NCBI GenBank assembly: GCA_002269645.1
Contig: NIVC01003215.1
Location: forward strand, 1-64,000
Reading direction: 5' to 3'
From: Macrostomum lignano
Lineage: Eukaryota
DNA: 64,000 bases
Position numbers and translations under genes: made by a program. The notes under the pieces are model-generated. The model worked only from the letters and a program-made list of their open reading frames with translations, was not told where the DNA came from and searched no databases. This document shows positions 8,001 through 63,914 of the stretch, piece after piece (the first letter of the stretch is position 1; the number at the start of each line of letters is the position of its first letter).

Positions 8001-11000
8001 AAGAAGTCTGTCAGTTGTTTGAAAGCGGCGTTGGCATCGGCGGAGCTGCCGGTTTTACTAGCGGGCTTACCGCCGACAGCTGCGCCGACTGTAGCCGCCA
8101 CCGGCTGCTGCTTCGGCTGGTCAACCCGGACCGGGGCCGCCTTTGACTCCTGGGGTGGGTAACAGTTCGGGATTGCTAGCTGGATGAGCTGGGGCATGGC
8201 TTGTTAGCGATGGATTATTGGGCATCATCATCCCCATGGTCATCATCATGATCAAAGTGGTCCCCATCAGCAGCTGGACATGTTGGCGAGTGAGCAGCTC
8301 CAGCTGCTCTATTTGGTTGCTGCAAAAGTGAAATGCAACGAGGCGGCGGGATGCAATGGTAGAACGTTTTTAATTAATGTTGACTAAACCAAATCCACGG
8401 GAACGCGCATTCACCATACTACTAATACTAAGTAGATTGAAATCCTTAGAGCTCTCATGACTAGAATATCTGGAAAACTTCAAACAACCCAGTTGCTTAA
8501 ATAGAAACCCGCCTATTAAATAGGGAAGCCCCAGAACCCAACTGAAACCTTAATAGAGGCCTGGCAAATTAATAAAACAATGAGAAAAATATAAATTATT
8601 AATAGATCGCTCGGCAGTGTAAAAACAAACTTATTGAAGCTTATTCGACGACGACCAACGGGATGGGGGGGGGGTAGTAGAGAGGAAACTGACGGGGTTG
8701 CTACGAATGCGACAAGCGGTTGTTTTGCATTATTAATAAATATATTCGAGCTAAGCATATGCTATATAGTATTAGCAAGTTTGCCAGGTGCGAGAACGTT
8801 TGGAAGGGGGGCACACAAAATTCAAAGACGAAGGAAAACCGGGGGGCGGCGGTCATGCAAATTCAGCAGTTCAGGCTGCAGGCAGGGCGGAATGCGCGGC
8901 ACGCCGCCGGTCACCCACCTGGCGCGTGGCGTGCAGGCGGTCGCCAGAGGCGCCAGCGTCGCCGTTACCGCTTCTGACTGCGCTACCGTCGTCTCCCGTA
9001 TCGCCTCCGCCGCTGCGCTGCCGCTGGATCATGGCGTCGACTTGGCGCAGCCGCTCCTTCACCTTCTGTCTCTCCAGGTGGCGCCGCTCGCGCTCTTCGG
9101 CTTTGCTGGCCGCGGAGGTCTCGTCGGCGGAGGGTTCAGCGGCCGAAGCTCGCTTGCTCTGGTGGTGCTGTCTGGACCGAGAGCCCGATCGGCTGCGGCG
9201 CTGACGGCTGCGACTGCGCTGCCGCTGATTCTGCTGACGGTGACCGCCGCCTCCGCCTGGCGCAGCTCCGCTAACGCCGCCGCCACCGCCCCCTCCGCCT
9301 GCCGACCCGTCAGAGTCACCGGGGCTTCGCCGGCGTCGATGCCGCTGGGATCGATCTCGACGGCCGCTAGAGCTATCAGCCTCGCCGCTGCTAGCCGACC
9401 GGCTGTCGTCGTCATCGCGCCGGTGACGCCGCTTTGACCGGCTTTTGCCGTGCCGATTCCGACCATTGTCGTCTCTTCGGCGACTGCCGCTATTGCTGTC
9501 GCCGTGTCGACGGTGCCGGTCCTTCTCGTGCTTCCCTTCCTTACCCCGATCGCCGTCTTCTTTGGCGTCTCGGCTGTTGCCTCGCGACCGATGTCGATGG
9601 CGCGACTGAGTCGGCGGCGTTGGGGACCGTCGTCGTCGGCGCTCCTCCCGATGTCGCTCGCCGCTTTGGTCATTGGGCGATCGCTCTCTGACCCGGTCCT
9701 TAGATCGCTCCGATGAGCGCCGGCTCTCCGTTGCCTCCTGGGCGGTTGGGGCCGATCGCGAGGCCAGGCGGTCCTTCGAGAGGCTCCGGCGCAGCTGGGA
9801 CTGCGGCCTTCGATCGTCTTCTCTCTGCGGCGCTTCTACAGGCTCCACCGCCGCAGACTTGGATTCGGCGGCCTTTGTTTCCTTCGACTTTTCATCGCCA
9901 GCTTTATCAGCTTCTTCACAACCGTCGTCATCGTCGTCCTCGCCGAACTCGGCTAGCGTCGACTTAAGCTGCCCTTTAGACGCAGAAGTGTTCCTTCTTT
10001 GAGTTGCGTTGGCGCCGCTTCCGGTGGCTGGCGCACCGGAGTCGCCGCCGGAGAAGCTCATGTGCACTTTCTCGCGAACCTCTGGCAGCTCACGCAGCTC
10101 AGTGCCAGCAGCCACGGCCGCGGCGCCGCGATTGTCAGCGTCGCTAAGCCCCATCTCGGTGTCAGTCAGCTGCTGCGGCTCCTCGTCCGACAGGGTCTCG
10201 TAGGAGCTTCCGCCAGACTCTCTGCGCCCGCCGCCGGGTTTGGCCGCGCCGCCGTCTCCGTTGTTTTTGCTCGCTTCGGCTGTTGAACGCCGACGCTCGC
10301 CGCCGTGATGTCTCTTCGGCGAGGCTCCCGGCGACGAGGCACGATGCGACCGGCGCGGAGACGACGAAGACTTTCGGTGCCTGCTGTGCCGATGGCGCCG
10401 GCTGTCTGGGGAGCGTGAGCCGCGCCTCCGCTTGCGGTGCCTGTGCCGGTGCCCGTGCGAGCCACTGGAGCGGCGACGGCGCCGGCTTCCTCCTCCTTCA
10501 CCTCCTCCGTCGTCCTCGCCGGGATCGCGCTGCACATAGCCGTCGTCGCGCTGGTGCATCATGAGCAGTTCGCGTTCTCGCGAAGATCGCAACCGATCGG
10601 CCTCCTGGCGGGTCATCAGAGCGCCGGGAATGGGCGGCAGCGCGGCCGGATTCAGGTGCGACACGTCTGGCAGTGGCGGCGCCTCGGCTGCCTGCTTGGC
10701 GGCCAGCAGCAGGTTCGGCCGGTTATGCTTCGGCTTGCCCTGGGCTGATGGTTTTAAGCTTGGCAGGCCGAGGTTTGAAAGGGCACTGGAACCGCTGAGG
10801 CTGGAGATGCCGCCAAGACTGGACAGCCCGCCGACACCACCAAGGCCAGAGAGTCCGCTGAGGCCACCGACACCGCTTAGGCTGGCGAGGCCGCCAGAGC
10901 CAAGCGAGGACACGCCTCCAATGCTGCTGCTCATGAGGCTGGTTATGCCGCCAGCTGCGCTGGACTCGGTGACAACGGAACTACCGGATCTGTTTCCACT

Positions 11001-12086
11001 GTCAGCGCGGGTGCGACTACCGCTTGCAGATCCAGTCAGGGCGGCTCCTGAAGATGAGGCCGCCGTGGTGCTGGGCATCGAGGAGCCGCCAGATCCGGAC
11101 TCGAACGGTTGGATTGGCGTCTTCTCGATGTCGGCCGCGTTAGGTAGGAAAAGCTCTGCGCGTCGGTTGCCGATGGGCGCGGCGCCTCCACCGCCGCTGC
11201 CACCGCCGGCCTGTCCGGCATTGCTAGCTGGGCCGCTGTCCGATTCTGGCAGTTTCTTTCGTTTAGCCGGCAAAACGCCAGTCTGCAAGGTTAGCGGCTT
11301 CCGTTTGCCCGGTCCGGCCGGTGCTTGGACCGGCATTGGCTGCTTCCACTGCTGCTGTTGTTGCTGCTGCTGCTGCTGGGTGGGCGAAGTGGCACTCTGC
11401 TGCCCACCAGACTGCTGCTGCATTGAAGCAACCACAATTGACGGCTGCTGAGACGGTTGCTGCTGGGAGTAGGGCACAGCGGAGCCGCTCTTGGCGTAGC
11501 TGATCATGCCGAATGCGCTTTTCAATGCGAATTTCACCGGCCCGCTGCTGGCCGAATGGTGAGAGCCGGCGGACAGGTGCGACAAATCCGGCGGTGGAGG
11601 GGCCGCGGTGTGCTCCAGCGCCGGCAGCTGGTCCGGCAGGGGAATGTCGGCCACATTGCCAAAGTCCTTGTCGCCGTCGAAGTCGTCGTCAATGTCGGAT
11701 CGGCTGGATGACGGCGGCGGCGACTTGCGGAGGTTTCGGGCCGGCGGCCGAGGCGGCGATGACGAAGGCGGCGGCGGTGGAGGCGGCGGCGGCGGCGGAG
11801 GGGGTGGCGGGGGAGGCGGCGGAGGCGGAGGGGGCGGCGGCGGCGCGGCTCTATTGACAGCCTGCACTGGCATCGGAATCTCGTCCAGCTCACTGAAAAG
11901 TTATTTGTTGATTGTTATTAATGTGGAAAATAAATTTCGCAACCATGGCTGCAATCATGGACCACTGAAACACATCTGGACTATTCAGTCTGAGTCTGCT
12001 CCAGTCCAGATAGTAGTTTCAGTGATGCATGGTATCTGATGGGAACAGCAAACTCACTCGGTTGGAAAAGCGGGGTCGTACTCCAT
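5015..12086 (-). CDS. setd2: SETD2/Set2-architecture protein (Pro- and RS-rich N-terminus, AWS, degenerate SET, helical region, WW, SRI); multi-exon
   Basis: Exon 1 (MEYDPAFPTD) splices GT-AG in frame to exon 2 at 11892. AWS: CGSDCVNRALRVEC...CPCGEMCTNRRF. SET region about 6900-7290. WW: WRSARDPDGRVYFYHLGTRRTVW. SRI: FTASMKEFV...GRITNQEDLKYLVKKMTHAILLKEL...KAKSYISKYM. Domain order matches SETD2. Confidence 0.9.
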
Positions 12087-14560: not shown

Positions 14561-17500
14561 TCAGGCCGATTCGCCAAACACAACGCAGTCGCTGCGTAGG
14601 CGCTTCCTCCGCCTGGCGAACAGCTGGCCCGGGCCCTGCAGCGCCTCGGCCAGCAGCGGCTGCGCAGGCGGCTCCGCTAAAATCGGCTGAGCCGGCGGCT
14701 GCGACTGGGGCTGCTTCGACGGCTGCTGCTGCGTCTCAACCGTCTCATTGGATGCCGTCGGCGGCGTTGGTGGCGGCGACGGCAGCGGCTCGTCCGGCAG
14801 TAGCAGCGGCCGGAGCAGCGGCTCACAAAGGCCGAGGCCCTCCAGAGAGGCGGACAGCGGCTCCTCGGCGGCGGGGGCCAGTGCTGTGGCCGACGCCGGG
14901 TCCAGGGTAGTCCGGCGCCGCTTCTTGTGCTTTTTCTTGGCGGACAACGGCGCAGTGGCAGCGGCGGAGTCGGCAGCCTCGCAGCCGTCTGACAGGCTGG
15001 CTATGGCGCTAATGAAGTCGTCAAGGCTGTAGCGCCGGCACAGCAGGGCAAAGCGGGACCGAAGCTGCTGCGGCAGGGCGGGCCAAGGCTGCAGCGAGGA
15101 CAGCAGCACGAGGTGGAAGTGCATGCCAGAGAGGCAGGCTCCGTCCTTGCCGGCTCCGTCTAGCAGCTCTCGGTGCCGGTGGACGGCAATGCGCACGACG
15201 GCCCGGACGCAGGCGTGGAACAGGCTGGCCTCGTCCGCGCCTAGCGTGCCGGCCCGCTTGTTGTATCTGGGGAGAGAGGAGCGTGGATTGGGAGCTGGGT
15301 GAGTGTTTTCGAATTTTAGAACTAGTGCTTTTACAATTATGACTAGTACTGTTGGAATTGGGACTCGTGCTGCTGGAATCGGGACTCATGCTGCTGGAAT
15401 CGGGACTAGTGCTATTGGAATGGGGACTAGTGCTGCTGGAATCGGGACTAGTGCTATTGGAATGGGGACTAGTGCTGTTGGAATGGGGACTATTGCTGCT
15501 GGAATCGGGACTAGTGCTGATGGAATTGGGACTAGTGCTGTTGGAATGGGGACTAGTCCTGCTGGAATCGGGACTAGTGCCGCTGGAATGGGGACTAGTG
15601 CTGCTGGAATCGGGACTAGTGCCGCTGGAATGGGGACTAGTGCTGCTGGAATCGGGACTAGTGCTGCTGGAATGGGGACTAGTGCTGCTGGAATGGAAAC
15701 TAGTGCTGTTGGAATGGGGACTAGTGCTGCTGGAATCGGGACTAGTGCTGCTGGAATGGGGACTAGTGCTGCTGGAATCGGGACTCTGTAATCAGCACTC
15801 ACTTGGAAGCCATCAGCCTGGCGCGGTCAACCAGCAACAGCAGTACGGTGTACAGCAGATGCTGGTGCACAAATGCGCACCTGGCGCACAGGTCGCCAAG
15901 CAAAGAGAGGCAGCGCAATCGAAAATTGGCGCCAAGATGCGAATCAATAGCGCGCTTCCACAGGTAGTCCAGGAAGCCGTGAGCAATCCGATCATTTGCT
16001 GAGCAGGCCAGCGCCAGCAGCAGGTGCAGTCGGGATGGTCCAGCCAGATGGGCCAACTCCCTGTCGAACACGGTCAGCAAGTCCTTGTACACAGCCTTGG
16101 TGCGGGGCCAGTCGCTGGGGTCCAGCTCGGCTCGCACGTAGCACAGCAGCGGATGAAGGCAGCCGTTGAGCTTCAGCCGCTGGTCGCAGGCGCGGCAACT
16201 GGCACCGCCAGCGGCAGGAGACGCGAGCAGCAACAGGCTGTGCAGCTCCGGGGTCAGCTTCCACCAGGTGTCAGTAGTTGCTGACGACTGACGACTGGCG
16301 AGACAGGCGGCTGACGCTTCGGCTGCGGCGGCCGATTGAGCGCAGGTGCACCGAGCCACCAAAGCGGTGCCTGAAAGTGCCCAGATTTGTACCAATAAAT
16401 CCTGAAGGACTGAAAAACTGACTACTAGCAAGTCAGTAGCAAGATAAGAGTTTGAAGTGAAGCATATTGCTTATATAGAGAGTGCAAAATAGGGTTTCAA
16501 CCAAACCTTTAAAAGTATATTTTGTTAGCATCTTACCATCGAAGCTTCGGCTTACGCCAGCCGTCTCATCAGCCAGGCTCTCCAGTTTAGCCACCGTTCG
16601 ACAGGCGACAAACAGCAGACGGGTGCGCAAGCCACCGCCGCTGCCGCCAGCTCCCAGATAGGTGGCAGCGGCACGGAGCACATTGAGCAGGTAGCAGGCC
16701 AGCTGGCGGGTCGGCCGGCCCCACAGGCAGTGCGACTCGGCCAAGTCGCAGATTGCGCCAGGCGCGGAGGCTGGGAAAGCGGAAGCGAGAGCCTCTAGCA
16801 GCCGGTGGGCGAGGCTGAACTGGCGTCTGAATGTGCGGGAATTTGGGGGAAATTACACAGGCTAGAATAGAGGCACATTGAAGGACCCAAAAGGAAGGGA
16901 TAGAGGCACACTGAAGGAAATAGAAGGGAAAGGATAGGGGCACATTGAAGGACATAGAAGGAAATAGTATATTAGAAGGATAAGGTTAAGAATAAGGTAT
17001 ATTAAAGATAAGGTGCAGCCCTTCGGCGTCGATACGATGGCCTAGGTGTGTGACTTCGTCCTTGAAAAAAGTGCACTTCTCAAGCTTGCAGGTCAGCCCG
17101 GACTCCTTGAAGACCTTCAGAACTGCTCTCAGGTTGCGGAGGTGACTGGCGTCGGTTTCGCCTGTGATGATGACATCATCGATGAAGGATGCAGAGTGCG
17201 GAATTCCTCGCAGTAAGCTGTCCATCACCCGCTGAAACACGCTGGGGGCGATCGACACGCCGAAAGGCAGACGGGTGTCCCAGCGAGGTGTTGATGGTAC
17301 AGAGCTCTTGAGCATCCTCATCCAGGGGAAGCTGCGAAAATGCCTGGCTCAGATCCAGTTTTGAGAACTTCTTTCTGCCAGCCAAGCGTGAAAACAGCTC
17401 GTCGATGTTCGGCAGCGGGTAAGCCTCAGGCCGGATAGCTGTGTTGACCGACTGCTTGAAATCAGCGCAGATGCGCACGCTGCCGTCGGACTTCATTACC

Positions 17501-19955
17501 GGCACGATCGGGGACGCCCAGTCGGAATTTTTGACCGGCACCAGGATTCCTTGGTCGATTTCCTTCTGCAGCTGCTGCTCAACCTTCTCGCGCAGCGCAA
17601 ACGGCACCGGCCGCGCCTTATAGAACCTCGGTCTGGCGTTCTCCTTCAGACTGATGGACACCGGCTTGCCGCTGAACTCGCCCAGACCTTGAAAGACTTC
17701 TGAGAACTCCTGTAGCAACTCCTTGGCTGCATCAGCTTCTTCCATCCGCTTGATAGATTGCCAGTCCAGCCGCAGGCGGTGTAGCCAGTCTCGACCAAGG
17801 AGGCTCGGACCACAACCGGCGACAACCAGCAGCGGCAGCTGTTCCTCGGCCGAACCTTGCGAAACTCGCACGCGTACGAAGAGCTGACCGAGGACACGGA
17901 CGGTTTGACCGGTGTACGCATTGAGCTGAACCGTTGACGCAGACAGAGACATCCGGCTTCCCATGTTTTCTTTGAGCGTACGCTCGGACATCAGCGATAC
18001 GGATGCCCCCGTGTCCACCACCATCTCGAATCGCTTCTCCTCGATGAAGACAGAGGTCACGATTAGAGGAAACCTGGCCTGCGATCGGTCAGCCCCCAGA
18101 TGGTAGAAGGGATAAGCGACCTCGACTGGGCTGGGCGGCTCGGCGGCCTGAGCTGAGCTGCTGTCTGAAGGCTGCTGGTCAACCAGCTGGTGCATTTGCT
18201 GCTGCTGTGTCACCGCCTTGCATGCCTTCGCGGTGTGCCCGGTTTTGCTGCAGTTGAAACAGCGTTTGTCCGCGAAGGGACATTTGGCTCCGGATGGCGA
18301 GTCGACAAGCAGCGGAAACAGCGCCGCCGGCCTTCTGTTCCAGACTGACGGCTGTCTTGCGGTCGCTGTCGTTCCATTCGAAGCACGGAGTCGCTCTCTG
18401 TCGGTGACGATGCCGATGTCGCTGCCGCAGGTTTTGCTGAGCCCAGCGATTGACAGTTTTTGGCTGCTGACTCGCCCGCTTGCGCGATCTGTTTGGCAGT
18501 TTCGAGGGTCAACTCGGTCTCCATCAGGAGAAGGCGCTGGATCTGCTGATCCGCGATGCCGCACACCAGCCTGTCGCGCAGCATGTCAGACAGGCTGCCG
18601 CCGTAATTGCAGAACTCCGCCAGCTTGCGCAGCTCCGCAAGGAACTCTGCCACCGACTCTCCAGGGCGCTGAACTCGGTTATTGAAGTGGAACCTCTGAA
18701 TGATCTCACTCGGCCTTGGGTTGAAATGAGCGCTCAGCAGCTCGCGTATTTCGGCATAGGATTTGTCCGCGATTTTGGCTGGAGAGCAGAGGCTTCTGGC
18801 CAACTGAAAGGTTTTCCTACCGCAGACGCTCAGCAGCGTGGCCCTCTTTTTACTTTCGTCGGTGATGTCCTGTGCCAGGAAATGTTGCTCCAGACGCTCC
18901 TGGTACTCATCCCAGGTTTCCTCGGAGTCCTCATATTCTCCGATTGCGCGGTTAGGCATTGCTTAGCCACAATTCTCGTCGCCACTAAAAACAACTCTAT
19001 AGTGGTTAGTGCGAGAAACCATAAGTATTGAGCTCTGAGCTCACTAGACGACTTTTATATTTTGGTACAAGCGAACGTAAGAATGATTGATGCATAAAAG
19101 CACAAGGGGTTTTAAAAGAACGCGCACACTAGTCACGCTCAATGAAGCATTGTCAGTCAATCGATGAAAATAAAACAGCGAATGTACTCAATGTACACCG
19201 CTGAGTCACGCGATACGACAGGCACATTGAAGCACATAGAAGGAAATAGTATATTAGAAGGATAGGGGCACATTGAAGGATACAGAAAGGACAGGATGGA
19301 GGCACAAAAGAAAAGGATAGAGGCACATGAAGGACCCCATGGGAGGGATAGTAACACATTGAAGGACCCAAAAAGAAAGGTTAGTGGCACAGTGAAGGGC
19401 CCAGTGTGAGCGATAGAGGCGCACTGAAGGACCCAGTGTGAGCGATAGAGGCGCACTGAAAGACCCAGTGAGGATAGTCGCAGCCCAGAAGCAAGACGCT
19501 AAGAAGCCGAAGCACACCAAGCGACACAATTAAATCCGAACCTGTCAGTCTTGAAGTCCTCAGCCTGGGCAGTTCCATCTGGCAGAGCGGGAGAGAACCA
19601 GACCACGGCAGATTGCATGGCCAGTTGGCGCAGGTCGGGATGCCGGCTAGCCAGGTGCAGGCAGAGCCGGCGGTACCTGTCCAGTCCGGCCGAGTCCAGC
19701 AGACGACAGGGCGGCCAGTTGGTGAGCAGCAGGCGGGCCAGCTCAGCGTGCCGCTCGGGGTCAATGCGGCCAGCCAGGGCTAACAGGTAGCGAACGACTG
19801 CGCCAGCCTGAGCCTCGGTTGCTAGGCGCTGGGCGGTCAGGCCACCTGAGGCCAACTCGTGGCAGGCCAAGTTGTAGTGCTTTGCGCTGGCTGGATTGGA
19901 GTCGAGGGCGCGTGACAGGGCGCCACAAAGTGCGCCGGCTGCCTGAATGGCGCCT
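14561..19955 (-). CDS. rrn3: RRN3/TIF-IA-like RNA polymerase I initiation factor (at least 4 exons: about 19955-19542, 16826-16550, 16375-15811, 15268-14561; first exon not located)
   Basis: Colinear matches to RRN3 blocks: AHRLLEALASAFP...RQLACYLLNVL (cf. CHRALQIIARYVP...RTLECYVHNLL); KAVYKDLLTVFDREL...GFLDYLWKR (cf. KDLYRDLINIFDKLL...AFLEHLWKK); LFHACVRAVVRIAVHRHRELL (cf. PFYSACQAVFYTFVFRHKQLL). The 19542-to-16826 splice is in frame. Confidence 0.8.
15345..15786. repeat. 21-bp intronic minisatellite (GGGACTAGTGCTGCTGGAATC/G), about 21 copies
   Basis: Direct inspection; it fills most of an rrn3 intron. Confidence 0.95.
17011..19220 (-). mobile_element. 3'-truncated Ty3/Gypsy LTR retrotransposon (putative 5' LTR, gag, protease, partial RT) in an rrn3 intron
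   Basis: A putative LTR starts TGTCGTATCG at 19220 and contains TATAAAA. A PBS-like TGGCGACGAG precedes the gag ATG at 18959. Gag has two CCHC-type knuckles. Protease VVDTGAS; RT motifs VRICAD, LDLSQAF, RLPFG, FIDDVII. There is no RNase H, integrase or 3' LTR. Frameshifts occur near 18287 and 17278. Confidence 0.9.
19221..19480. repeat. Degenerate GAGGCACATTGAAGG-type minisatellite, continued at 16860-16982 on the other side of the Gypsy insertion
   Basis: The same motif family flanks both ends of the retroelement. Confidence 0.7.
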
Positions 19956-21474: not shown

Positions 21475-22794
21475 CGAGGGCTGCTTAATAAGTTTGCGGA
21501 AAACCAAACTTATCTTCAAGCGAATCAAACGAAATTTTATGAACTTTTTCCTTCAGATATTGGCACCTTTCACACAAATTTTCAGCCAGTTTGGCCAAAA
21601 TGTTGCGACGCAGTGGCCGAAGAAGTGATGAAACCCCCACTCCAGTGCTGCGCCTGACTGAGCGCGACAGGCGAGTCGCAATTCTGGTCCAATTCCGGCT
21701 TGGCCTGTCTGCCTCCGAATGCTTGCAGACGCTTCAAAAGGCCCTTGAGAGTGAAGCCCCATCCCAGACGATGGTGTACAAGTGGTTCGGTCGATTCCGC
21801 TCTGGTTGTCTGGAGCTGGACGATGATGAACGTGAAGGCCGTCCAAATTCGTCCATCTCGGACACGACTGTGGCCAGTGTCTGAAAGCTGCTCGATGCAG
21901 ACCGCCGAGTGACAATTCGGGAAATCGAAAAACATGTCGGGATTTCGGATTCAAGCGTCATTACTATCTTGCACGATCACCTCGGCATGAGGAAGGTGTC
22001 AGCTCGCTGGGTCCCTCATCAACTGAAGCCGGCTCAGATGCAGGCCCGCGTGGATTTTGCGAATTTCATGCTCGACAAGTTCGACGCAGGCGCCTCAAAT
22101 TTGGTGGACGGCATCCTCACAGGTGATGAAACGTGGGTGTACTTTTATGATCCCGAGACAAAAGTACAGAGCAAGCAGTGGGTCGCCTTTGAGGAGGATT
22201 CGCCCTTGAAATTTCGTCACGAGCGAAGCGTCGGCAAAGTGATGGCTGCGGTGTTTTTCCATTGGTGCGGAATTCTGCTGCCCGTTCTGCTCGAGGAGGG
22301 AGCCACAGTGACTGGCAGCTGGTACTCCAGTGTCTGCCTGCCGCAGGTGCTGGAATTCCTGCGTCGAGAGCGGCCAAAGACCAGAGATCGCGGCATTTTC
22401 CTGCACCACGACAATGCGCCCGCTCACAGAGCCAGTGTCACCCAGCAGTTCTTGGCATCAACTGAGCTGACTCTGCTGCCGCATCCGGCCTACTCGCCCG
22501 ACCTCGCGCCTGCAGACTTCTTTCTCTTTCCAAAGATCAAGAAAAATCTGAAGGGGAAGCGCTTCGACACTCGTGAGGAGCTGGAACAGGCGTTGAATGC
22601 GGAGCTGGAAGCCGTCACAAAGGCGGAATTGAGGGACTGCTTTGCGGCGTGGTTTCATTGGATGAAGAAATGCGTTTATCTGGCTGGGGACTATGTTGAG
22701 AAGTGCCATTAGGTTGGGCTAAGTGTGTGTAAAATTTCACGACTGTGCGATAACTATAAGTATGTTTTTCCGCGAACTTATTAAGCAGCCCTCG
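21475..22794 (+). mobile_element. Full-length mariner (DD34D) transposon, 1320 bp, TA TSD, one in-frame stop in the transposase
   Basis: TIRs CGAGGGCTGCTTAATAAGTT(T/C)GCGGAAAA are flanked by TA. ORFs 21591-21884 and 21909-22712 share a frame. Motifs: HTH, WVPHQL, TGDETW, HHDNAPAH, YSPDLAPAD. There are 34 residues between the last two Asp. Confidence 0.96.
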
Positions 22795-55300: not shown

Positions 55301-55737
55301 TACCATTAAAGGTCATTTATTGTTGCAACACTAGCCTACATTTAGGACTATAGGCATGCACTCAAAGAAGTATATTAGAGACCCTAACTTTATGACCTTT
55401 CAGAGCAAAGTTTTTTCAGGTAGCTAGATGCAATTTCTAAACTGTATCAAAATTATGAAATGCTAATTAAAGAAAGAATTCCTATCTAAAACAACCAAGA
55501 GCCAAATTTCTTGTAGTGTAGCCTAGATGGACTCTAGCTTTCACTCATAGTTCATCAAAACATGAAAGCGTAGACCTCAGTTTTATACAGCCAACATAGA
55601 TAGCTAGTCTGTTAGAGGCAGTCTTGACGCATTAATGTAGAAAAGGTATTGTGCAAATTAGTAGTAAATAAGTGTATTAATTTGTGTTCTCTAATTTTCT
55701 GCCTCGGAAGCCGGAGTGCGCGGCGCATCACTCCCAG

Positions 55738-57820
55738 ATGGACACTGACGCCCCCGCTGCCTCCGCCACCGCCGCCGCCGACTCCAGCTCCGCCCCGACG
55801 ATGGATAGCGGCCTGTTTGCCGACTCCGGCATCGGCGCAACCGAGATGGAAAACGAAATTTCCTCCGCTAGCAGCGCCACGCCTGGGTCGCTTTGCTTCC
55901 GCGACATGATGAGCCGGCTGCCTCCGGTGCACAGGCAGGGACTCAAGCGGCTGATCGGGTATGCTCAGAGGCAGAAGAATCCGCGCTTAATTGGCACCCG
56001 GATAGCCGTAGAGCAGGTGGACTTCCTGGCTGAGCTGGACGACTACGACCGCTCCGGATTCCTGCTGGACTGCCTGTTCAAACGGGCCGGCTTTGATGCG
56101 GCCACCTGCGCCCTAATGCGCCTCGTCAGCTCCCGATGGCGTCAGCTAGTTGATAGGTCTGTCTGTTGTAAATGGGCTTTTTGTTGCTTGATGCTATTTA
56201 CTGACGCCACTATATTCCCGATTGTCGCCTCTATATTCCCGATTGGCGCCTCTATATTCCCGATTGGCGCCTCTATATTCCCGATTGGCGCCTCTATATT
56301 CCCGATTGGCGCCTCTAGATTCCCAATTGGCGCCTCTATATTCCCGATTGGCGCCTCTATATTCCCGATTGGTGTCTAGATGTCCTTATAGTGGTGCCTG
56401 GACTATCCTATAGTGATGCCTGGACTATCCTATAGTGATGCCTGGACTATCCTATAGTGATGCCTGGACTATCCTATAGTGATGCCTGGACTATCCCATA
56501 GTGATGCCTGGACTATCCTATAGTGATGCCTGGACTATCCTATAGTGATGCCTGGACTATCCTATAGTGATGCCTGGACTATCCTATAGTGATGCCTGGT
56601 CTATCCTATAGTGATGCCTGGACTATCCCATAGTGGTGCCTGGATATCCCATAGTGGTGCCTGGGTTTCCCATAGTGGTGCCTGGATATCCCATAGTAGT
56701 GCCTGGATATCCCATAGTGGTGCCTGGATATCCCATAGTAGTGCCTGGATTTCCCATAGTGGTGCCTGGGTTTCCCATAGTGGTGCCTGGATATCCCATA
56801 GTGGTGCCTGGATATCCCATAGTGGTGCCTGGATATCCCATAGTAGTGCCTGGATTTCCCATAGTGGTGCCTGGGTTTCCCATAGTGGTGCCTGGATATC
56901 CCATAGTGGTGCCTGGATATCCCATAGTGGTGCCTGGATATCCCATAGTGGTGCCTGGATATCCCATAGTGGTGCCTGGATATCCCATAGTGGTGCCTGG
57001 ATGCTGCACAATAGCATCTTGGCAATCCAAAGTGGCGGCTCCGAACCTTTTCTTGAACGTCGAATTCTCTTTTGAACTAAATTACTTTTTCTCTCCACTC
57101 CCTAGATTCGGCACCCGTGGTGGCCCGGCCAGAAACGACGTCGGGGCTGGTGGCAGAGCCGACAAAGACACGACTAGCCGTCGCCATCATCGCCGTCGGC
57201 GTCGGAAACATCGCCGAGCCACGCTGGACAGCTCGTCGACGTCTTCTATAGAAAATCGCAGCCTAAACGAAAGCGGCGCCGGCGCCAGCCGTCGGAGCAG
57301 CTTGTCGGCCGCTTCAACTGTCGTTCCTAGCGCCGGCGGGACCTTCGGTGACGCGCAGTTATCGGCGGCGGTTGCCATGGAGACGTCGCCGGCGCCATCG
57401 ACATCCAGTCCGGCTTGGCCCAGCCAGCCGCCGCGGCGTGCTTTGAGGATGGCACCGCCAGTCGCCGTGGTTGACAGTTTTCAGGCCGACGCCGGCGAAG
57501 CCGCTAGCGTCGGTGGCAGCAGCGGCGGCGGCGGCGGCCGCTTGTTCGACGCATTCGTTGAAGAAAGCAAGCGGCTGGTGAACAATCAGGGCCTGCGCCC
57601 GTGTCCGCGCTGCCGCTGGCCGGCCAGAGTCGATCCGGACACCCGCATCGGGCGTTGCACCCGGCCGGAGACCGAGTGCGGCTTTGCCTTCTGCCTGAAC
57701 TGCCTGACCGACGGGCACCTGTACCGCCACTGCCCGTTCCTGCTGCAAACCAGCCCAGTAAAGCCGCCTCCGCCGCCGAAGCAGCGGCTTAGCTTGAAAA
57801 AGCGGCTGCATCGGCTTTGA
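55738..57820 (+). CDS. fbxo5: Emi1/Emi2/Rca1-like APC/C inhibitor (F-box, ZBR zinc finger, RL tail); exons about 55738-56155 and 57106-57820
   Basis: RLIGTRIAVEQVDFLAEL...VSSRWRQLV resembles the Emi1 F-box. ZBR: CPRC...C..ECGFAFCLNC...H...C. The C-terminus KKRLHRL* matches the Emi RL tail. DSGxx motifs lie near the N-terminus. The splice GAT AG|A TTC is in frame. Confidence 0.85.
56207..57002. repeat. Two abutting, related 21-bp intronic minisatellites (about 8 and about 29 copies)
   Basis: TATTCCCGATTGGCGCCTCTA followed by TATCCCATAGTGGTGCCTGGA. Confidence 0.95.
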
Positions 57821-59144: not shown

Positions 59145-59963
59145 TGTACAAATTTAGACGTGAGGCCGTGGTTTTGTCTCGCATAGAGACGCCTAACCGC
59201 AGTCACTTCTGTGAAACTTGTCTCTGCCTGGCTGAAAGCTTGTAATGAGTGAGTAGGCTGGGTTGGAGGGTAATAGTGGATCGGGAGGGGCTGTGGGTAG
59301 CTGTATAGGAAGGCAGGCCTATACCTGTACCAAGGTGCTCTGACGGTATCCCTCAGGCGCCCTCTGAGCGTACAGCCAGCGACCCTATTAAAGCTGGAGT
59401 GTGCCAAAACCAGGACTGAGTCTGAGCAGGACGGGGCCGTTGGCACGGCCACTATAAAAATGGCGGGTTGGCGAAGCAAAGGGTGAAATAGTCCCGGCGA
59501 ATAGCCCTCCTGCCGCTTCAAAGATAAGAGACTGTCTGGCAAGAATACCCAGTGTTTAGTGGGGGGGGGAAGGCTCCTTCGGGTTGCCACGGCCGTGGGA
59601 GGGTCTTTATGACCGTTTTTGGCACTACTAACTCCGGAGAAGGCACGGGCTTCCCTGATTGGTTCACTTAACCCTCGCTGGTCCCGGGGAGGTTTAGTAT
59701 TGTGTCTGGAGTAGGTGTGACGCCCCGACAGCTAGGGGTAGGGCCCGCCCTCAGCCCGACTGATGTCGCCTGCTCGGTTTGATTGGTCACAGTCTCCTAT
59801 AGCCTAATTTAGAAGCCTAGTGTACCTGAGTACACTCCCAACCTGGAAACTAATTTATGTTAGTGGCGTAAGAGCCTATTCATTTGGCTTAGGCGCCGAT
59901 TTTACTTATTTTAGTTAGTTACGTGAGCTTATGGGGGATAGGAGGTAGATATTGCCAATTACA
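59145..59963. other. GC-balanced non-coding island with CCAAT and GC boxes (solo-LTR-like or promoter)
   Basis: A compositional step against AT-rich flanks, two CCAAT boxes and GGGCGG on the minus strand, and TGT/ACA at the approximate edges. No TSD found. Confidence 0.25.
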
Positions 59964-60154
59964 GGTGTGCAAAGATAGTCCTATTGCTTATAATACACGG
60001 GATCTTCTCATGCTTTGCTAATTTCTTCTCTATAATATTAGTAGACTAGTAGCCAAGTCACTGATCAGTCTCGACTTCTTATACATAAAAATCAATAATT
60101 GATCAATTGCAGGCCCCAGTGGCACTCTGTTGACCCCTCCGGCCATCAGTAGGC

Positions 60155-60439
60155 ATGAGCGCCCTGTCTAGCACTGCTCGCTACCAGTTCATCTACGCGC
60201 TGCCATCGCGACTGCAGGCTCCAGCCGAGCAGCCAGCAGCTGCGGCGGCGGCCGCCACAGTGGCAATGATCGGCAGGCGGCACCAGTTCTGCTGCCGAGA
60301 CGGTTGTAGCAATTTAGCCGTGAGCGATCCGCGCTGGGACTGGGAGTACTGCTCAGCCGACTGCTGCCTGGCTCACGTTGATGAAGTTCGCAGTCTGTTT
60401 GTTGAGCTTAATAACAGCGGCGATATGAACAAGATTTAG
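60155..60439 (+). CDS. 94-aa ORF with a TOX4-type C-terminal Cys/His motif and no HMG box
   Basis: CCRDGCSNLAVSDPRWDWEYCSADCCLAHVDEV aligns with the remembered TOX4 C-terminus [33 protein letters not shown]. The segment is GC-rich and exon-like. Confidence 0.72.
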   Translation: MSALSSTARYQFIYALPSRLQAPAEQPAAAAAAATVAMIGRRHQFCCRDGCSNLAVSDPRWDWEYCSADCCLAHVDEVRSLFVELNNSGDMNKI

Positions 60440-60844
60440 CAGTTTTTATTTTCGATATGATGCGTCAGCTCGTACTCTCGCTAAAGGCAGCCATCAGTTA
60501 TCAGAATTACTTTCATAATTTCTCTGCTTGTACAGTGAAATGAAATCTATGAGCTAGGTTTTTACTACGGTACCAGTGCTGTTTGTAGTGTTGATTGTAA
60601 TAAACAAAAGAATTTTGCATTTTTATCATAAAGCAGCTCATATACAAGTAAGTGTTGAAACTAGTTACTACAATTAAAGCTTTGTGGCCTATGTGGTTTA
60701 TGCGTCTGCCTTCTAAACATTCTTTTCAAGCAGTTTATATTTTAATAAAAATTTGATTCGCCTCTTTTATTTCTGTTCCTAACTTCTTATCTGATCTTTA
60801 CTGATTTTTTCCAGGGTCCATAAATAACTGATCTCTTAGCTAAG

Positions 60845-61352
60845 ACAGATAAGCCAGGCACCCAACTGTACATTGGGGCAGATAAGCCAGGCACTCAACT
60901 GTATATTGGGGCAGATAAGCCAGGCACTCAACTGTATATTGGGGCAGATAAGCCAGGCACTCAACTGTATATTGGGGCAGATAAGCCAGGCACTCAACTG
61001 TATATTGGGGCAGATAAGCCAGGCACCCAACTGTATATTGGGGCAGATAAGCCAGGCACCCAACTGTATATTGGGGCAGATAAGCCAGGCACCCAACTGT
61101 ATATTGGGGCAGATAAGCCAGGCACTCAACTGTATATTGGGGCAGATAAGCCAGGCACTCAACTGTATATTGGGGCAGATAAGCCAGGCAGTCAACTGTA
61201 TATTGGGGCAGATAAGCCAGGCACCCAACTGTATATTGGGGCAGATAAGCCAGGCACCCAACTGTATATTGGGGCAGATAAGCCAGGCACCCAACTGTAT
61301 ATTGGGGCAGATAAGCCAGGCACCCAACTGTGTATTGGGGCAGATAAGCCAG
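60845..61352. repeat. 33-bp minisatellite (GGGGCAGATAAGCCAGGCACYCAACTGTATATT), about 15 copies, immediately 5' of the CCR4 coding exon
   Basis: Direct inspection; 11-aa periodic ORFs. Confidence 0.95.
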
Positions 61353-61479
61353 CAATTCAGAGAGCAGCAATTTTGCAGCCGGGCAAACCGCAGCAGCCCA
61401 GTTTAACCGCCGCCGCACAGACAAGCGCAAGACAGGAAGGAAGACGCATCAGCCAGCAGGTGAACGCGGTGGACAGACG

Positions 61480-63914
61480 ATGCACAGGAAGCGCAAATGG
61501 GAGCAGGGCCGGGCCAGCAGGCAGGTGCAATTCCTCACTGCGGAGGACCGCGAAACCGGCGGCAAGGCCTGCTGGGACCAGCTGGAAATTGTCGGCAATG
61601 TGAAAATATTCCCGCCCGGCCTGTGCTGCATGACCTACCTGCGCTACCTGTACATGTCACACAACAAAATCAGCGTCATCCCCAGCCAGATTTCCCAGTT
61701 GAAGAATCTCGTTCACCTGGACCTGTCCTTCAATATGATCAAGATTCTGCCGCCGGAGATTGGCGAACTCACTGAGCTTAAGGAGCTCTACCTGCAGAAC
61801 AACCAAATCAGAGCTCTGCCCATGCAGATTGGCCGCCTGTTCCAGCTCACCACCCTTAATCTGAATCACAATCCGCTTAGTCCGGACATCTCTCAGCTTT
61901 ACAATGCTGAGACTACTCAGAATATGCTCAGCTGGTTTCTGGATAGCGAAGGTATTATTAGAGTCTTGGCTGGTTCAATCTGTGCATTTTTTACTTAGAC
62001 TGAAACTGAAACTACTGAAAATTTACTGAGAAAATCATTTCTAAGAGAGCTCCTATCATCAAGTAAGAATAGCATGGAATAAGCTTCTCTCTAAGAACCC
62101 CGCTTATTCAAATTAGAAGTCCATCGTAGAAATTGCATATCTATTCAACTTAAAGTCCCCCCCCCCTGCCTAGATTAAACTATCGCCCATGGTACCTGTA
62201 TTTCTAAGAAAACCGAAATCGCACCACAGGATTCGCCATGCCGCCGCCGCCCAGCCGAAACTGGCGGTACCTGCGCAATCCCAACGACACCAGCGATGGA
62301 ATGGCCTTCACGCTCATGTGCTACAACGTACTGTGCGAAGGCTACGCCACTAAGAAGCAGTACCCCTACTGTCCGTCCTGGGCGCTGCAGTGGGAGTACC
62401 GGAGACGCGGCATTATGGATGAGATTCGTGTCTACCAGGCTGATATTCTCTGTCTGCAGGTGCGCCTTTGCTTTATTCAGTTGGTTTGCTACCTTCCTTA
62501 GGTGCTCAGGTCGCCACATTTCCAGATGATCAGGTCACCACACTACCAGGTGCTCAGTTTGTTACCCTGCAAGATCCACATTCCCAGGTGTGGTCAGGTC
62601 GCCACACTCCCAGTTGGTCACATTCCCAGGTGTGGTCAGGTCGCCACACTCCCAGTTGGTCACATTCCCAGGTGTGGTCAGATCGCCACATTCCCAGTTG
62701 GTCACATTCCCAGGTGTGGTCAGGTCGCCACACTCCCAGTTGGTCACATTCCCAGGTGTGGTCAGGTCGCCACACTCCCAGTTGGTCACATTCCCAGGTG
62801 TGGTCAGGTCGCCACACTCCCAGTTGGTCACATTCCCAGGTGTGGTCAGGTCGCCACACTCCCAGTTGGTCACATTTCCAGGTGTGGTCAGGTCGCCACA
62901 CTCCCAGTTGGTCACATTCCCAGGTGTGGTCAGGTCGCCACACTCCCAGTTGGTCACATTCCCAGGTGTGGTCAGATCGCCACACTCCCAGTTGGTCACA
63001 TTCCCAGGTGTGGTCAGATCGCCACACTCCCAGTTGGTCACATTCCCAGGTGTGGTCAGATCGCCACACTCCCAGTTGGTCACATTCCCAGGTGTGGTCA
63101 GGTCGCCACACTCCCAGTTGGTCACATTCCCAGGTGTGGTCAGATCGCCACACTCCCAGTTGGTCACATTCCCAGGTGTGGTCAGGTCGCCACACTCCCA
63201 GTTGGTCACATTCCCAGGTGTGGTCAGATCGCCACACTCCCAGTTGGCCACATTCCCAGGTGTGGTCAGATCGCCACACTCCCAGTTGGTCACATTCCCA
63301 GGTGTGGTCAGATCGCCACATTCCCAGTTGGTCACATTCCCAGGTGTGGTCAGATCGCCACACTCCCAGTTGGTCACATTCCCAGGTGTGGTCAGGTCGC
63401 CACACTCCCAGTTGGTCACATTCCCAGGTGTGGTCAGGTCGCCACACTCCCAGTTGGTCACATTCCCAGGTGTGGTCAGGTCGCCACACTCCCAGTTGGT
63501 CACATTCCCAGGTGTGGTCAGGTCGCCACATTCCCAGGTGTGGTCAGGTCGCCACATTTCCTATGGTCGCTCTGCATTGACCCAACCCTTTCATTGATAT
63601 TTGGTTCAAAGGTTATTCCAGTTAAATGGCATTAATTCAGTTGCTATGCAGCCAGCCCCATCACTCCAGCCTCCCCCCGCCCGCAGGAGGTGGAGACCGA
63701 GCAGTTCTCGGTGTTCTTCAAGCCCGAGCTGGCCAAAAGCGGCTATGACGGCATCTTTAGCGCGAAGAGCCGCGCCAAGACGATGTCGGCAAGCGAGAGC
63801 AAGTACGTCGACGGGGTGGCCATCTTCTGGAAGAAAGAGCGCTTCAATCTCATCAAAGAGGACGTCATCGAGTTCTCGCGCATGGCTGTTGAACGCTACG
63901 AGAAGGATTGCAAG
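61480..63914 (+). CDS. cnot6: CCR4/CNOT6 deadenylase (LRR plus EEP nuclease), partial; exons 61480-61951, 62230-62459, 63687-63914, continuing beyond the window
   Basis: WDQLEIVG, LRR repeats, FTLMCYNVLC, YCPSWALQWEYRR, ADILCLQ|EVETEQ, GYDGIFSAKSRAKTMS, VDGVAIF. The frame is open upstream to 61348, so the true start may be earlier. Confidence 0.95.
62576..63560. repeat. 42-bp intronic minisatellite (CACATTCCCAGGTGTGGTCAGGTCGCCACACTCCCAGTTGGT), about 23 copies
   Basis: Direct inspection; 14-aa periodic ORFs in several frames. Confidence 0.96.

What the first reader, a model, noticed from the sequence alone, without database searches (positions are those of the whole stretch)
60113..60439. Apparently stand-alone TOX4 zinc-motif microprotein
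Seen: a 94-aa ORF whose only structured part matches C-x-R-x-G-C-x-N-x7-W-D-x-E-Y-C-S-x2-C-x3-H. There is an in-frame stop at 60131 upstream of the ATG and no HMG-box exon between the Emi1-like gene and this ORF. Knowledge: the TOX4 C-terminal region binds the PNUTS N-terminal domain in the PP1-PNUTS-WDR82-TOX4 complex controlling Pol II CTD dephosphorylation. Inference: a DNA-binding-less microprotein that could compete with or replace TOX4. With the SET-dead but SRI-intact SETD2, this window may hold two non-canonical Pol II CTD-pathway modulators; that link is speculative.
Basis: partly seen in the sequence, partly recalled or inferred. Interest (0 to 1): 0.7.

Follow-up and report, generated by a model that had tools for sequence, protein, structure and literature searches.

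The report
Flatworm stand-alone TOX4-tail microprotein gene
A small, separate gene in the flatworm Macrostomum lignano encodes only the zinc-binding tail that TOX4-type proteins use to dock onto the PNUTS-PP1 phosphatase. It has no DNA-binding part, so it is probably a natural competitor or decoy for that docking site, but this has not been tested.

Summary
Window 60155-60439 (+) is a 94-aa ORF, and residues 43-89 are a true homologue of the TOX4 C-terminal zinc/PNUTS-binding domain (PDB 9CI7 chain B, E=2.6e-6). The AlphaFold model scores pLDDT >90 over roughly 41-80 and Foldseek's top hit is 9ci7_B. All four zinc cysteines are present.

The window is Macrostomum lignano contig NIVC01003215.1. 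The ORF is annotated there as a separate 94-aa gene. Two further genomic copies keep the same neighbours: Emi1-like, then the microprotein, then CNOT6-like, then a caspase.

No TOX-type HMG box exists in any frame of the 64-kb window. A full-length TOX-like gene (470 aa, HMG box plus the same tail, intronless) lies on another contig, so the small gene adds to TOX rather than replacing it.

A TTGCAG motif, the species' spliced-leader acceptor consensus, ends at 60112, and AATAAA follows at 60599. The domain shows constraint: 4 synonymous to 1 non-synonymous change between copies, and saturated synonymous sites (pS 0.76) against pN 0.29 versus the TOX-like tail.

Most likely it is an Id-like, DNA-binding-less PNUTS binder. 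Binding and competition were not tested, M. lignano PNUTS could not be retrieved, and no transcript data were accessible. There is no evidence for a link to the SETD2-like gene. Interest is moderate.

The parts
60107..60112 (+). TTGCAG, putative spliced-leader trans-splice acceptor (exon would start at 60113)
   Evidence: Matches the M. lignano SL acceptor consensus [T/C]TNCAG (PMC8629364). It is invariant in all three copies. An identical TTGCAG at 61373-61378 sits 3 nt before the annotated 5' end of the next gene's CDS. The motif occurs about 2 times per kb by chance, so alone it is weak evidence.
60113..60154 (+). Short 5' leader; in-frame TGA at 60131-60133
   Evidence: Read directly. In the ORF's frame a stop closes the leader, so an exon joined at 60112 cannot read into the ORF. 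The other two frames from 60113 are also closed: TAG at 60150 in one, and a TAG just past the ATG in the other.
60155..60439 (+). CDS of the 94-aa microprotein (stop included)
   Evidence: The exact protein is in NCBI/UniRef as an annotated M. lignano gene product.
60155..60280 (+). Residues 1-42: N-terminal region with a poly-Ala run, predicted disordered and fast-evolving
   Evidence: pLDDT <50 for 1-12, 15-30 and 32-38. Ser6Ala and a 3-bp Ala indel separate the copies. No homologue apart from a doubtful repeat-protein match.
60281..60421 (+). Residues 43-89: TOX4-type C-terminal domain, a zinc loop plus the PNUTS-binding helix
   Evidence: 9ci7_B at E=2.6e-6. 10-residue block mean pLDDT is 93-96 for residues 51-80, 81 for 41-50 and 86 for 81-90; helix 68-88. 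Foldseek top hit 9ci7_B, prob 1.00, TM(target) 0.62. 60% identical to the tail of the M. lignano TOX-like protein.
60290..60364 (+). Codons of the four predicted zinc ligands: C46 (60290-92), C51 (60305-07), C66 (60350-52), C70 (60362-64)
   Evidence: They align with human TOX4 C572, C577, C592 and C596, the zinc ligands in the crystal structure (alignment; PMC12278311). C46, C51, C66 and C70 are nearly invariant across 78 family members.
60440..60620 (+). 3' UTR with AATAAA at 60599-60604 (end approximate)
   Evidence: Motif positions. The region is about 96-97% identical overall to the two other copies, with 2 and 6 base mismatches over 406 nt, the rest being indels. The poly(A) site itself was not observed.

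Best explanation
This is an independent small gene of Macrostomum lignano. It arose by an old partial duplication of the 3' end of the species' TOX-like HMG-box gene.

Its mRNA most likely starts at a spliced-leader acceptor (TTGCAG ending at 60112) and ends after AATAAA at 60599. It may be processed from an operon-like unit shared with the neighbouring CNOT6-like gene.

It encodes a 94-aa protein with a disordered N-terminal 42 residues, followed by the TOX4-type C-terminal domain. That domain is a four-cysteine zinc loop and an amphipathic helix. In human and fly TOX4 it is sufficient for sub-nanomolar, zinc-dependent binding to the Tox4-binding helices of the PNUTS N-terminal domain.

The protein lacks the HMG box. 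It is therefore expected to occupy the single TOX site on PNUTS and give PNUTS-PP1-WDR82 complexes without the DNA-binding subunit. That would make it a competitor or decoy of the full-length TOX-like protein, comparable to Id proteins or plant microProteins.

Shown here: homology, predicted fold, absence of an HMG box, separate annotation in three copies, and sequence constraint. Inferred: trans-splicing, translation, PNUTS binding and competition.
For: - Homology and fold.
- Zinc ligands and interface mapped on 9CI7 (PMC12278311). C46/C51/C66/C70 are kept. W61, Y65, L72, V78, F82 and V83 occupy six of the eight hydrophobic contact positions.
- The two unusual substitutions (human F605->R, W608->F) are shared with the M. 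lignano full-length TOX-like protein P0002. Both proteins therefore plausibly fit the same lineage-specific partner surface.
- In the published work the human CTD alone (51 aa) binds PNUTS with Kd 0.3 nM.
- No HMG box anywhere in the 64 kb.
- The TOX-like gene is intronless and on another contig, so the ORF is not a detached last exon of it.
- Three genomic copies with identical synteny are each annotated as a separate 93/94-aa gene. The annotation pipeline is transcript-based and cuts genes at SL and poly(A) sites (PMC5730564).
- The acceptor motif and AATAAA are conserved.
- Constraint between copies: in the domain, 4 synonymous to 1 non-synonymous change (binomial p=0.007). Changes outside the domain are non-synonymous, an in-frame indel or a stop shift.
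- Constraint versus the TOX-like CTD: pS=0.76 (saturated) against pN=0.29 (Fisher p=9e-6). This is too low a ratio for a copy that has drifted neutrally since duplication.
Against: - No transcript, SL-read, ribosome or peptide data could be examined. The gene IDs were absent from the supplementary expression tables of the two papers searched, and no paper's main text mentions them.
- M. lignano PNUTS could not be retrieved, so the partner and its interface were not checked.
- Several contact positions differ from the metazoan consensus: D586->R60, a charge reversal at a salt-bridge residue; K585->P59; F605->R79; R612->N86.
- Overall ORF divergence between copies (3.2%) is no lower than nearby non-coding DNA (about 2.6% upstream, 0.5-1.5% downstream).
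- The four synonymous changes are clustered in 34 bp, so they may be one event, such as a conversion tract. That would weaken the 4:1 test.
- The acceptor motif is common by chance (about 2 per kb).
- After trans-splicing, the SL's terminal AUG would open a 7-codon upstream ORF.
Confidence: 0.55

Rival explanations
1. The protein is functional and CTD-only, but it is not a competitor. Either it is a constitutive alternative subunit that stabilises or chaperones the PNUTS N-terminal domain in particular tissues, or its diverged helix binds a partner other than PNUTS.
For: The domain is constrained. Salt-bridge and contact residues are changed: R60, P59, R79, N86 against human D586, K585, F605, R612. 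In Drosophila, Tox4 has both PNUTS-dependent and PNUTS-independent roles (PMC12278311).
Against: The same F->R and W->F changes occur in the full-length M. lignano TOX-like protein. This points to a shared partner surface rather than a new one. The only known function of this fold is PNUTS binding.
Confidence: 0.22
2. It is a transcribed but functionless relic of a partial gene duplication. The ORF is open only because the three copies diverged recently.
For: Total divergence of the ORF between copies is similar to flanking non-coding DNA. The N-terminus and C-terminal tail change freely, including a shifted stop. No expression or orthologue data were found.
Against: Synonymous sites are saturated relative to the parent TOX-like CTD, yet 60% of residues are retained, including all zinc ligands and core aromatics. 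pN/pS is far below the value of at least 0.5 expected if one lineage had been neutral. There is a 4:1 synonymous excess in the domain. The ORF is intact in all three copies.
Confidence: 0.13
3. It is the last coding exon of a larger gene. Its HMG-box or other exons would lie beyond the window or belong to the upstream Emi1-like gene, joined through the weaker acceptors at 60149 or 60152.
For: CAG at 60147-60149 and TAG at 60150-52 would allow an in-frame junction. Transcript data were not seen.
Against: No HMG box in 60 kb upstream in any frame. An unrelated, complete gene with its own stop (Emi1-like, 55702-57820) lies between. Independent gene models exist in three loci. The species' real TOX-like gene is intronless. 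The strongest acceptor (60112) is followed by stops in all frames.
Confidence: 0.07

Closest known systems
TOX4 C-terminal domain (human TOX4 571-621; Drosophila Tox4/CG12104 206-246), PDB 9CI7, Duncalf et al. 2025 (PMC12278311)
   Same: Same fold and motif: a four-Cys zinc loop followed by a long helix. The key W, Y and hydrophobic helix positions are conserved. The domain sits at the extreme C-terminus of the protein.
   Different: Here the domain is the whole structured protein, with no HMG box and no long N-terminal region. Several polar contact residues and F605 and W608 are substituted. Zinc and PNUTS binding were not tested.
M. lignano TOX-like HMG-box protein (P0002/P0079; Mlig018335.g1/.g2, 470/471 aa)
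   Same: 60% identical over 45 residues of the CTD. Shares lineage-specific features (ADCCL, HV instead of HC, R at the F605 position, F at the W608 position).
   Different: The full-length protein has a Q-rich N-terminus, an acidic stretch, an HMG box (275-331) and a K-rich linker. It lies on a different contig and is intronless. Synonymous sites between the two are saturated, so the split is old.
MicroProteins / dominant-negative single-domain paralogues (Id proteins versus bHLH factors; plant LITTLE ZIPPER versus HD-ZIPIII) - from general knowledge
   Same: A small protein that keeps only the protein-interaction module of a multi-domain transcription regulator and lacks the DNA-binding part. 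It is encoded by a separate gene.
   Different: The target here would be a phosphatase scaffold (PNUTS) rather than dimerisation with the parent factor. No functional data exist.
Short HMG-less 'TOX4' entries in other animals: Kerria lacca XKL60989.1 (98 aa), Strongylocentrotus purpuratus XP_011673527.1/XP_003723723.1 (138/152 aa), Anopheles triannulatus A0A2M4AUE3 (131 aa)
   Same: CTD at the C-terminus of a protein shorter than 155 aa with no HMG box. The Kerria gene sits between RPS8 and THOC5 with no TOX-type HMG box within 10 kb either side.
   Different: These are not orthologous to the flatworm gene. Each resembles its own clade's TOX CTD. Some may be partial models or isoforms, and none is characterised.

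Membership tests
TOX subfamily of HMG-box proteins | TOX-type HMG box | tested here: not met
   Pfam finds no domain in the ORF. There is no HMG box in any frame of the window. P0002 from the same species does have one.
TOX subfamily of HMG-box proteins | Descent from a TOX gene (shared derived CTD sequence) | tested here: met
   The best non-self hit in 1.84 billion representatives is the M. lignano TOX-like protein (E=3.2e-10), with shared lineage-specific residues.
TOX4-type C-terminal zinc/PNUTS-binding domain (9CI7) | Four cysteine zinc ligands with spacing C-x4-C-x14-C-x3-C | tested here: met
   C46, C51, C66 and C70 align to C572, C577, C592 and C596. They are nearly invariant in the family alignment.
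TOX4-type C-terminal zinc/PNUTS-binding domain (9CI7) | Zinc loop followed by a long helix; fold matches the crystal structure | tested here: met
   AF2 helix 68-88, with 10-residue block mean pLDDT 93-96 for residues 51-80 and 81-86 for the flanking blocks. Foldseek top hit 9ci7_B, prob 1.00.
TOX4-type C-terminal zinc/PNUTS-binding domain (9CI7) | Conserved PNUTS-contact residues | tested here: inconclusive
   6 of 8 hydrophobic contacts are kept or conservatively replaced. F605->R, D586->R, K585->P and R612->N differ. The F->R and W->F changes are shared with the species' own full-length TOX-like protein.
TOX4-type C-terminal zinc/PNUTS-binding domain (9CI7) | Zinc-dependent binding to the PNUTS N-terminal domain | not testable with these tools
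   M. lignano PNUTS could not be retrieved.
MicroProtein (competitive single-domain paralogue) | Small, separate gene, keeps only the interaction domain of a larger regulator | tested here: met
   94 aa. Separate gene models in three loci. CTD only.
MicroProtein (competitive single-domain paralogue) | Interferes with the parent protein's complex formation | not testable with these tools
   Needs binding and competition assays or genetics.
SL trans-spliced M. lignano gene | [T/C]TNCAG acceptor immediately 5' of the mature mRNA, with no upstream cis donor | tested here: inconclusive
   TTGCAG at 60107-60112 is conserved in all copies. The motif frequency is about 2 per kb, and SL-containing reads were not available.

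The most novel reading that the evidence does not exclude
HMG-less, CTD-only TOX4 derivatives may be a recurrent, independently evolved class of endogenous regulators. They would cap the Tox4-binding site of PNUTS and so tune how much PNUTS-PP1 is tethered to chromatin through an HMG box. The flatworm gene would be the cleanest case: a separate locus, three conserved copies, and a full-length paralogue retained. Scale-insect, sea-urchin and mosquito examples would be parallels.
Probability: 0.25. Interest if true: 0.7.

Novelty: new variant of a known kind. Interest (0 to 1): 0.45.

Why it matters
PNUTS-PP1 is a main RNA polymerase II CTD/SPT5 phosphatase controlling pausing and termination, and the role of its TOX4 subunit is still poorly understood. 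The TOX4 tail alone binds PNUTS at 0.3 nM. A naturally encoded tail-only protein would therefore be a ready-made endogenous competitor. It would give a genetic handle, in an RNAi- and transgenesis-capable flatworm, for separating the DNA-tethering function of TOX from PNUTS occupancy.

It also shows that short ORFs annotated as 'hypothetical protein' can be recognisable interaction modules. Similar HMG-less entries in other phyla deserve a check.

Tried and rejected
- **Pfam on the ORF:** no family models this domain.
- **Word-indexed homologue search:** found only the species' own copies. The exhaustive HMMER search was needed.
- **Pfam on raw frame translations:** Replaced by a local TOX-HMG HMM.
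- **M. lignano PNUTS:** a search with the human PNUTS N-terminal domain returned only vertebrate fragments. An alignment of those hits would not reach flatworms, so the last search was not spent.
- **Expression data:** the gene IDs Mlig016869, Mlig023070 and Mlig018335 appear in no paper's main text and not in the supplements of PMC5816591 or PMC12896417.
- **Literature:** no paper connects TOX4 with a microprotein form. Of the two papers holding both terms, the one listed is an unrelated cancer lncRNA review.
- **Rfam and tRNA scans of 55-64 kb:** nothing. No genomic SL copy in the window.
- **Match of ORF residues 1-41 to P0003:** P0003 is a protein of four 93-aa repeats matching at 39% identity. 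Judged probably fortuitous.
- **'Detached last exon of the TOX gene':** rejected because that gene is intronless and on another contig.
- **Link to the SETD2-like gene:** rejected for lack of any positional or sequence connection.

Full report
**Where the window comes from.** The exact 94-aa product of window 60155-60439 is an annotated protein of Macrostomum lignano (assembly GCA_002269645.1). Window coordinates equal contig NIVC01003215.1 coordinates. M. lignano is a free-living flatworm with a recent genome duplication, widespread spliced-leader (SL) trans-splicing and operon-like gene clusters (PMC5730564, PMC8629364).

**The observation.**
- Pfam has no model for the motif.
- phmmer against PDB sequences finds one significant hit, TOX4 chain B of entry 9CI7 (E=2.6e-6, ORF residues 43-89).
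- An exhaustive HMMER search of 1.84 billion cluster representatives returns 77 proteins at E<=1e-3. In nearly all, the motif lies at the extreme C-terminus, and 30 also carry an HMG box. They include TOX-family proteins of a sea star, a nemertean, a leech and a mite.
- An AlphaFold model built on that alignment is confident only for the domain. Residues 1-38 are mostly below pLDDT 50; 10-residue block means are 93-96 for residues 51-80 and 81-86 for the flanking blocks; there is a helix at 68-88.
- Foldseek against PDB puts 9ci7_B first, with prob 1.00 and 52 of 53 residues aligned. MYND domains follow far behind, as the crystallographers also reported.

**Mapping on the crystal structure.** Duncalf et al. 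2025 (PMC12278311) show several things about human TOX4 571-621:
- It binds zinc through C572, C577, C592 and C596.
- Residues 597-612 form the PNUTS-binding helix.
- This 51-residue piece alone binds the PNUTS N-terminal domain with Kd 0.3 nM, on helices 1-4. This is a surface distinct from the TIM-binding face.

In the ORF the four ligands are C46, C51, C66 and C70.

| Human TOX4 contact | ORF residue |
|---|---|
| W587 | W61 |
| Y591 | Y65 |
| V597 | C71 |
| V598 | L72 |
| V604 | V78 |
| F605 | R79 |
| W608 | F82 |
| V609 | V83 |
| K585 (polar) | P59 |
| D586 (polar) | R60 |
| D588 (polar) | D62 |
| R612 (polar) | N86 |
| N613 (polar) | N87 |

So the zinc site and most of the hydrophobic stripe are kept, while some polar contacts and F605 are not.

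**A full-length TOX-like gene exists elsewhere.** The best non-self hit (P0002, E=3.2e-10) is an M. lignano 470-aa 'HMG box domain-containing protein'. It has a 471-aa second copy. Its HMG box is at 275-331 and its CTD at 420-464 is 60% identical to the ORF. It shares the ORF's unusual residues: ADCCL, HV in place of the near-universal HC, Arg at the F605 position and Phe at the W608 position. Its CDS is a single 1413-bp exon on another contig. The microprotein therefore adds to TOX rather than replacing it, and it is not a stray last exon of that gene.

**Stand-alone status.**
- tblastn with all 77 family members, and a TOX-specific HMG HMM run with --max on every stop-to-stop fragment of all six frames, find no HMG box anywhere in the 64-kb window. 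The HMM scores E=2.5e-26 on the real TOX-like locus, though that sequence was in its training set.
- Directly upstream on the same strand is a complete, unrelated gene. It is Emi1-like, has an IBR-type zinc region, is annotated at 55702-57820 and has its own stop.
- Two other M. lignano contigs carry a 93-aa version in the same order: Emi1-like, microprotein, CNOT6-like, caspase. In one of the two no upstream gene was called. In every case the microprotein is annotated as its own gene.
- That annotation derives from a transcript assembly cut at experimentally mapped SL and poly(A) sites. I could not see the underlying reads.
- TTGCAG at 60107-60112 fits the species' SL acceptor consensus [T/C]TNCAG. 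The identical hexamer at 61373-61378 lies 3 nt before the annotated 5' end of the CNOT6-like CDS, which suggests such sites are used here.
- From 60113 the ORF's frame is closed by TGA at 60131 and the other two frames are also closed, one only by a TAG just past the ATG. AATAAA lies at 60599.
- The gap to the CNOT6-like acceptor is about 770 bp, of which 507 bp is a 33-bp tandem array. Under the repeat-adjusted criterion of PMC8629364 the two genes would count as one operon. This is an inference.
- The hexamer is frequent by chance (about 2 per kb), so the trans-splicing claim stays provisional.

**Is it maintained by selection?**
- Between the window copy and the two 93-aa copies, the domain (residues 43-85) has four synonymous and one non-synonymous change (dN/dS about 0.06; binomial p=0.007).
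- Outside the domain the differences are Ser6Ala, a 3-bp alanine indel, Asn87Ser and a stop shifted by two codons.
- Against the TOX-like CTD, synonymous sites are saturated (pS 0.76) while pN is 0.29 (Fisher p=9e-6). If the small gene had drifted neutrally since duplication, the ratio should be at least about 0.5.
- Caveats: the four synonymous changes lie within 34 bp and may be one event. Overall ORF divergence (3.2%) is not lower than flanking DNA (about 2.6% upstream, 0.5-1.5% downstream). No orthologue from another species is in the databases.

**Mechanism.** The best-supported reading is a DNA-binding-less paralogue that keeps only the PNUTS-docking module. The isolated human CTD is sufficient for sub-nM binding, and PNUTS has a single Tox4-binding surface. 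A CTD-only protein should therefore compete with the full-length TOX-like protein and produce PNUTS-PP1 complexes without an HMG box. The shared lineage-specific substitutions in both M. lignano proteins fit a common, co-evolved partner surface.

These steps are not shown: translation, zinc binding, PNUTS binding and competition. M. lignano PNUTS could not be retrieved with the available search. Alternatives are given as rivals: an alternative constitutive subunit or a new partner, a relic, or a mis-split exon.

**Comparison and novelty.** The domain belongs to the TOX4 CTD family by sequence and predicted fold. The protein fails the defining HMG-box criterion of the TOX family. Functionally it resembles Id-type or plant microProteins.
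- The only listed paper holding both 'TOX4' and 'microprotein' is an unrelated review.
- The gene is deposited only as 'hypothetical protein'.
- Short HMG-less CTD proteins are also present for Kerria lacca, Strongylocentrotus purpuratus and Anopheles.
- The Kerria gene lies between RPS8 and THOC5 with no TOX-type HMG box within 10 kb. The phenomenon may be recurrent, though those models are unverified.

I rate this a new variant of a known kind, of moderate interest. The suggested connection with the SETD2-like gene at 5-12 kb (AWS, SET and SRI domains) has no support beyond co-occurrence in the window.

Noticed in passing
window 59165-59920 (target-site duplications 59158-59164 and 59921-59927): A 756-bp GC-rich insertion flanked by a 7-bp direct duplication (ACGTGAG). 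It is absent from both paralogous loci L001 and L002, so it is probably a recent transposable-element insertion about 190 bp upstream of the putative acceptor. No Rfam or tRNA match.
   Followed up: partly
window 61373-61381: TTGCAG lies immediately before the annotated 5' end of the CNOT6-like CDS (starts at 61381, not at an ATG; first ATG at 61480). This suggests the gene model was cut at an SL trans-splice site. An SL-donated AUG joined at 61379 would be out of frame and open a ~75-codon overlapping ORF (61379-61603).
   Followed up: partly
window 5018-11873, minus strand: SETD2-like gene with Pfam AWS, SET and SRI hits. In the SET domain the usual NHSC motif reads SCSG and the FDY tyrosine reads IDC (seen in the ORF 6758-8197 translation). 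Not analysed further.
   Followed up: partly
window 60281-60318: All four synonymous differences between this copy and the two 93-aa copies fall within 34 bp (His43, Gly50, Asn53, Leu54 codons). This could be a small gene-conversion tract or a multi-nucleotide event. The donor is not the TOX-like gene, whose codons differ.
   Followed up: partly
window 56205-57002, 60846-61352, 62577-63546: Large, very regular tandem arrays (21 bp x 8 and x 29 inside the Emi1-like gene span; 33 bp x 15 between the microprotein and CNOT6-like genes; 42 bp x 23 inside the CNOT6-like gene span). They create long spurious ORFs in several frames.
   Followed up: no
L005 10001-10863 (Kerria lacca CP138445.1): A 98-aa CTD-only 'hypothetical protein' gene with one intron lies between RPS8 and THOC5. 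No TOX-type HMG box within 10 kb on either side. This may be an independent HMG-less TOX4-tail gene in a scale insect.
   Followed up: partly
window 60155-60277 (ORF residues 1-41) versus P0003: The disordered N-terminus matches, at 39% identity, each of four 93-aa repeats of an unnamed 362-aa database protein (E=1.6e-6 in the large search). Probably fortuitous or compositional, but unexplained.
   Followed up: partly
window 16986-18959 (minus) and 21909-22712 (plus): Retroelement gag/protease/RT-like ORFs and a mariner-type transposase ORF lie between the SETD2-like gene and the kinase gene. Judged from their translations only.
   Followed up: no
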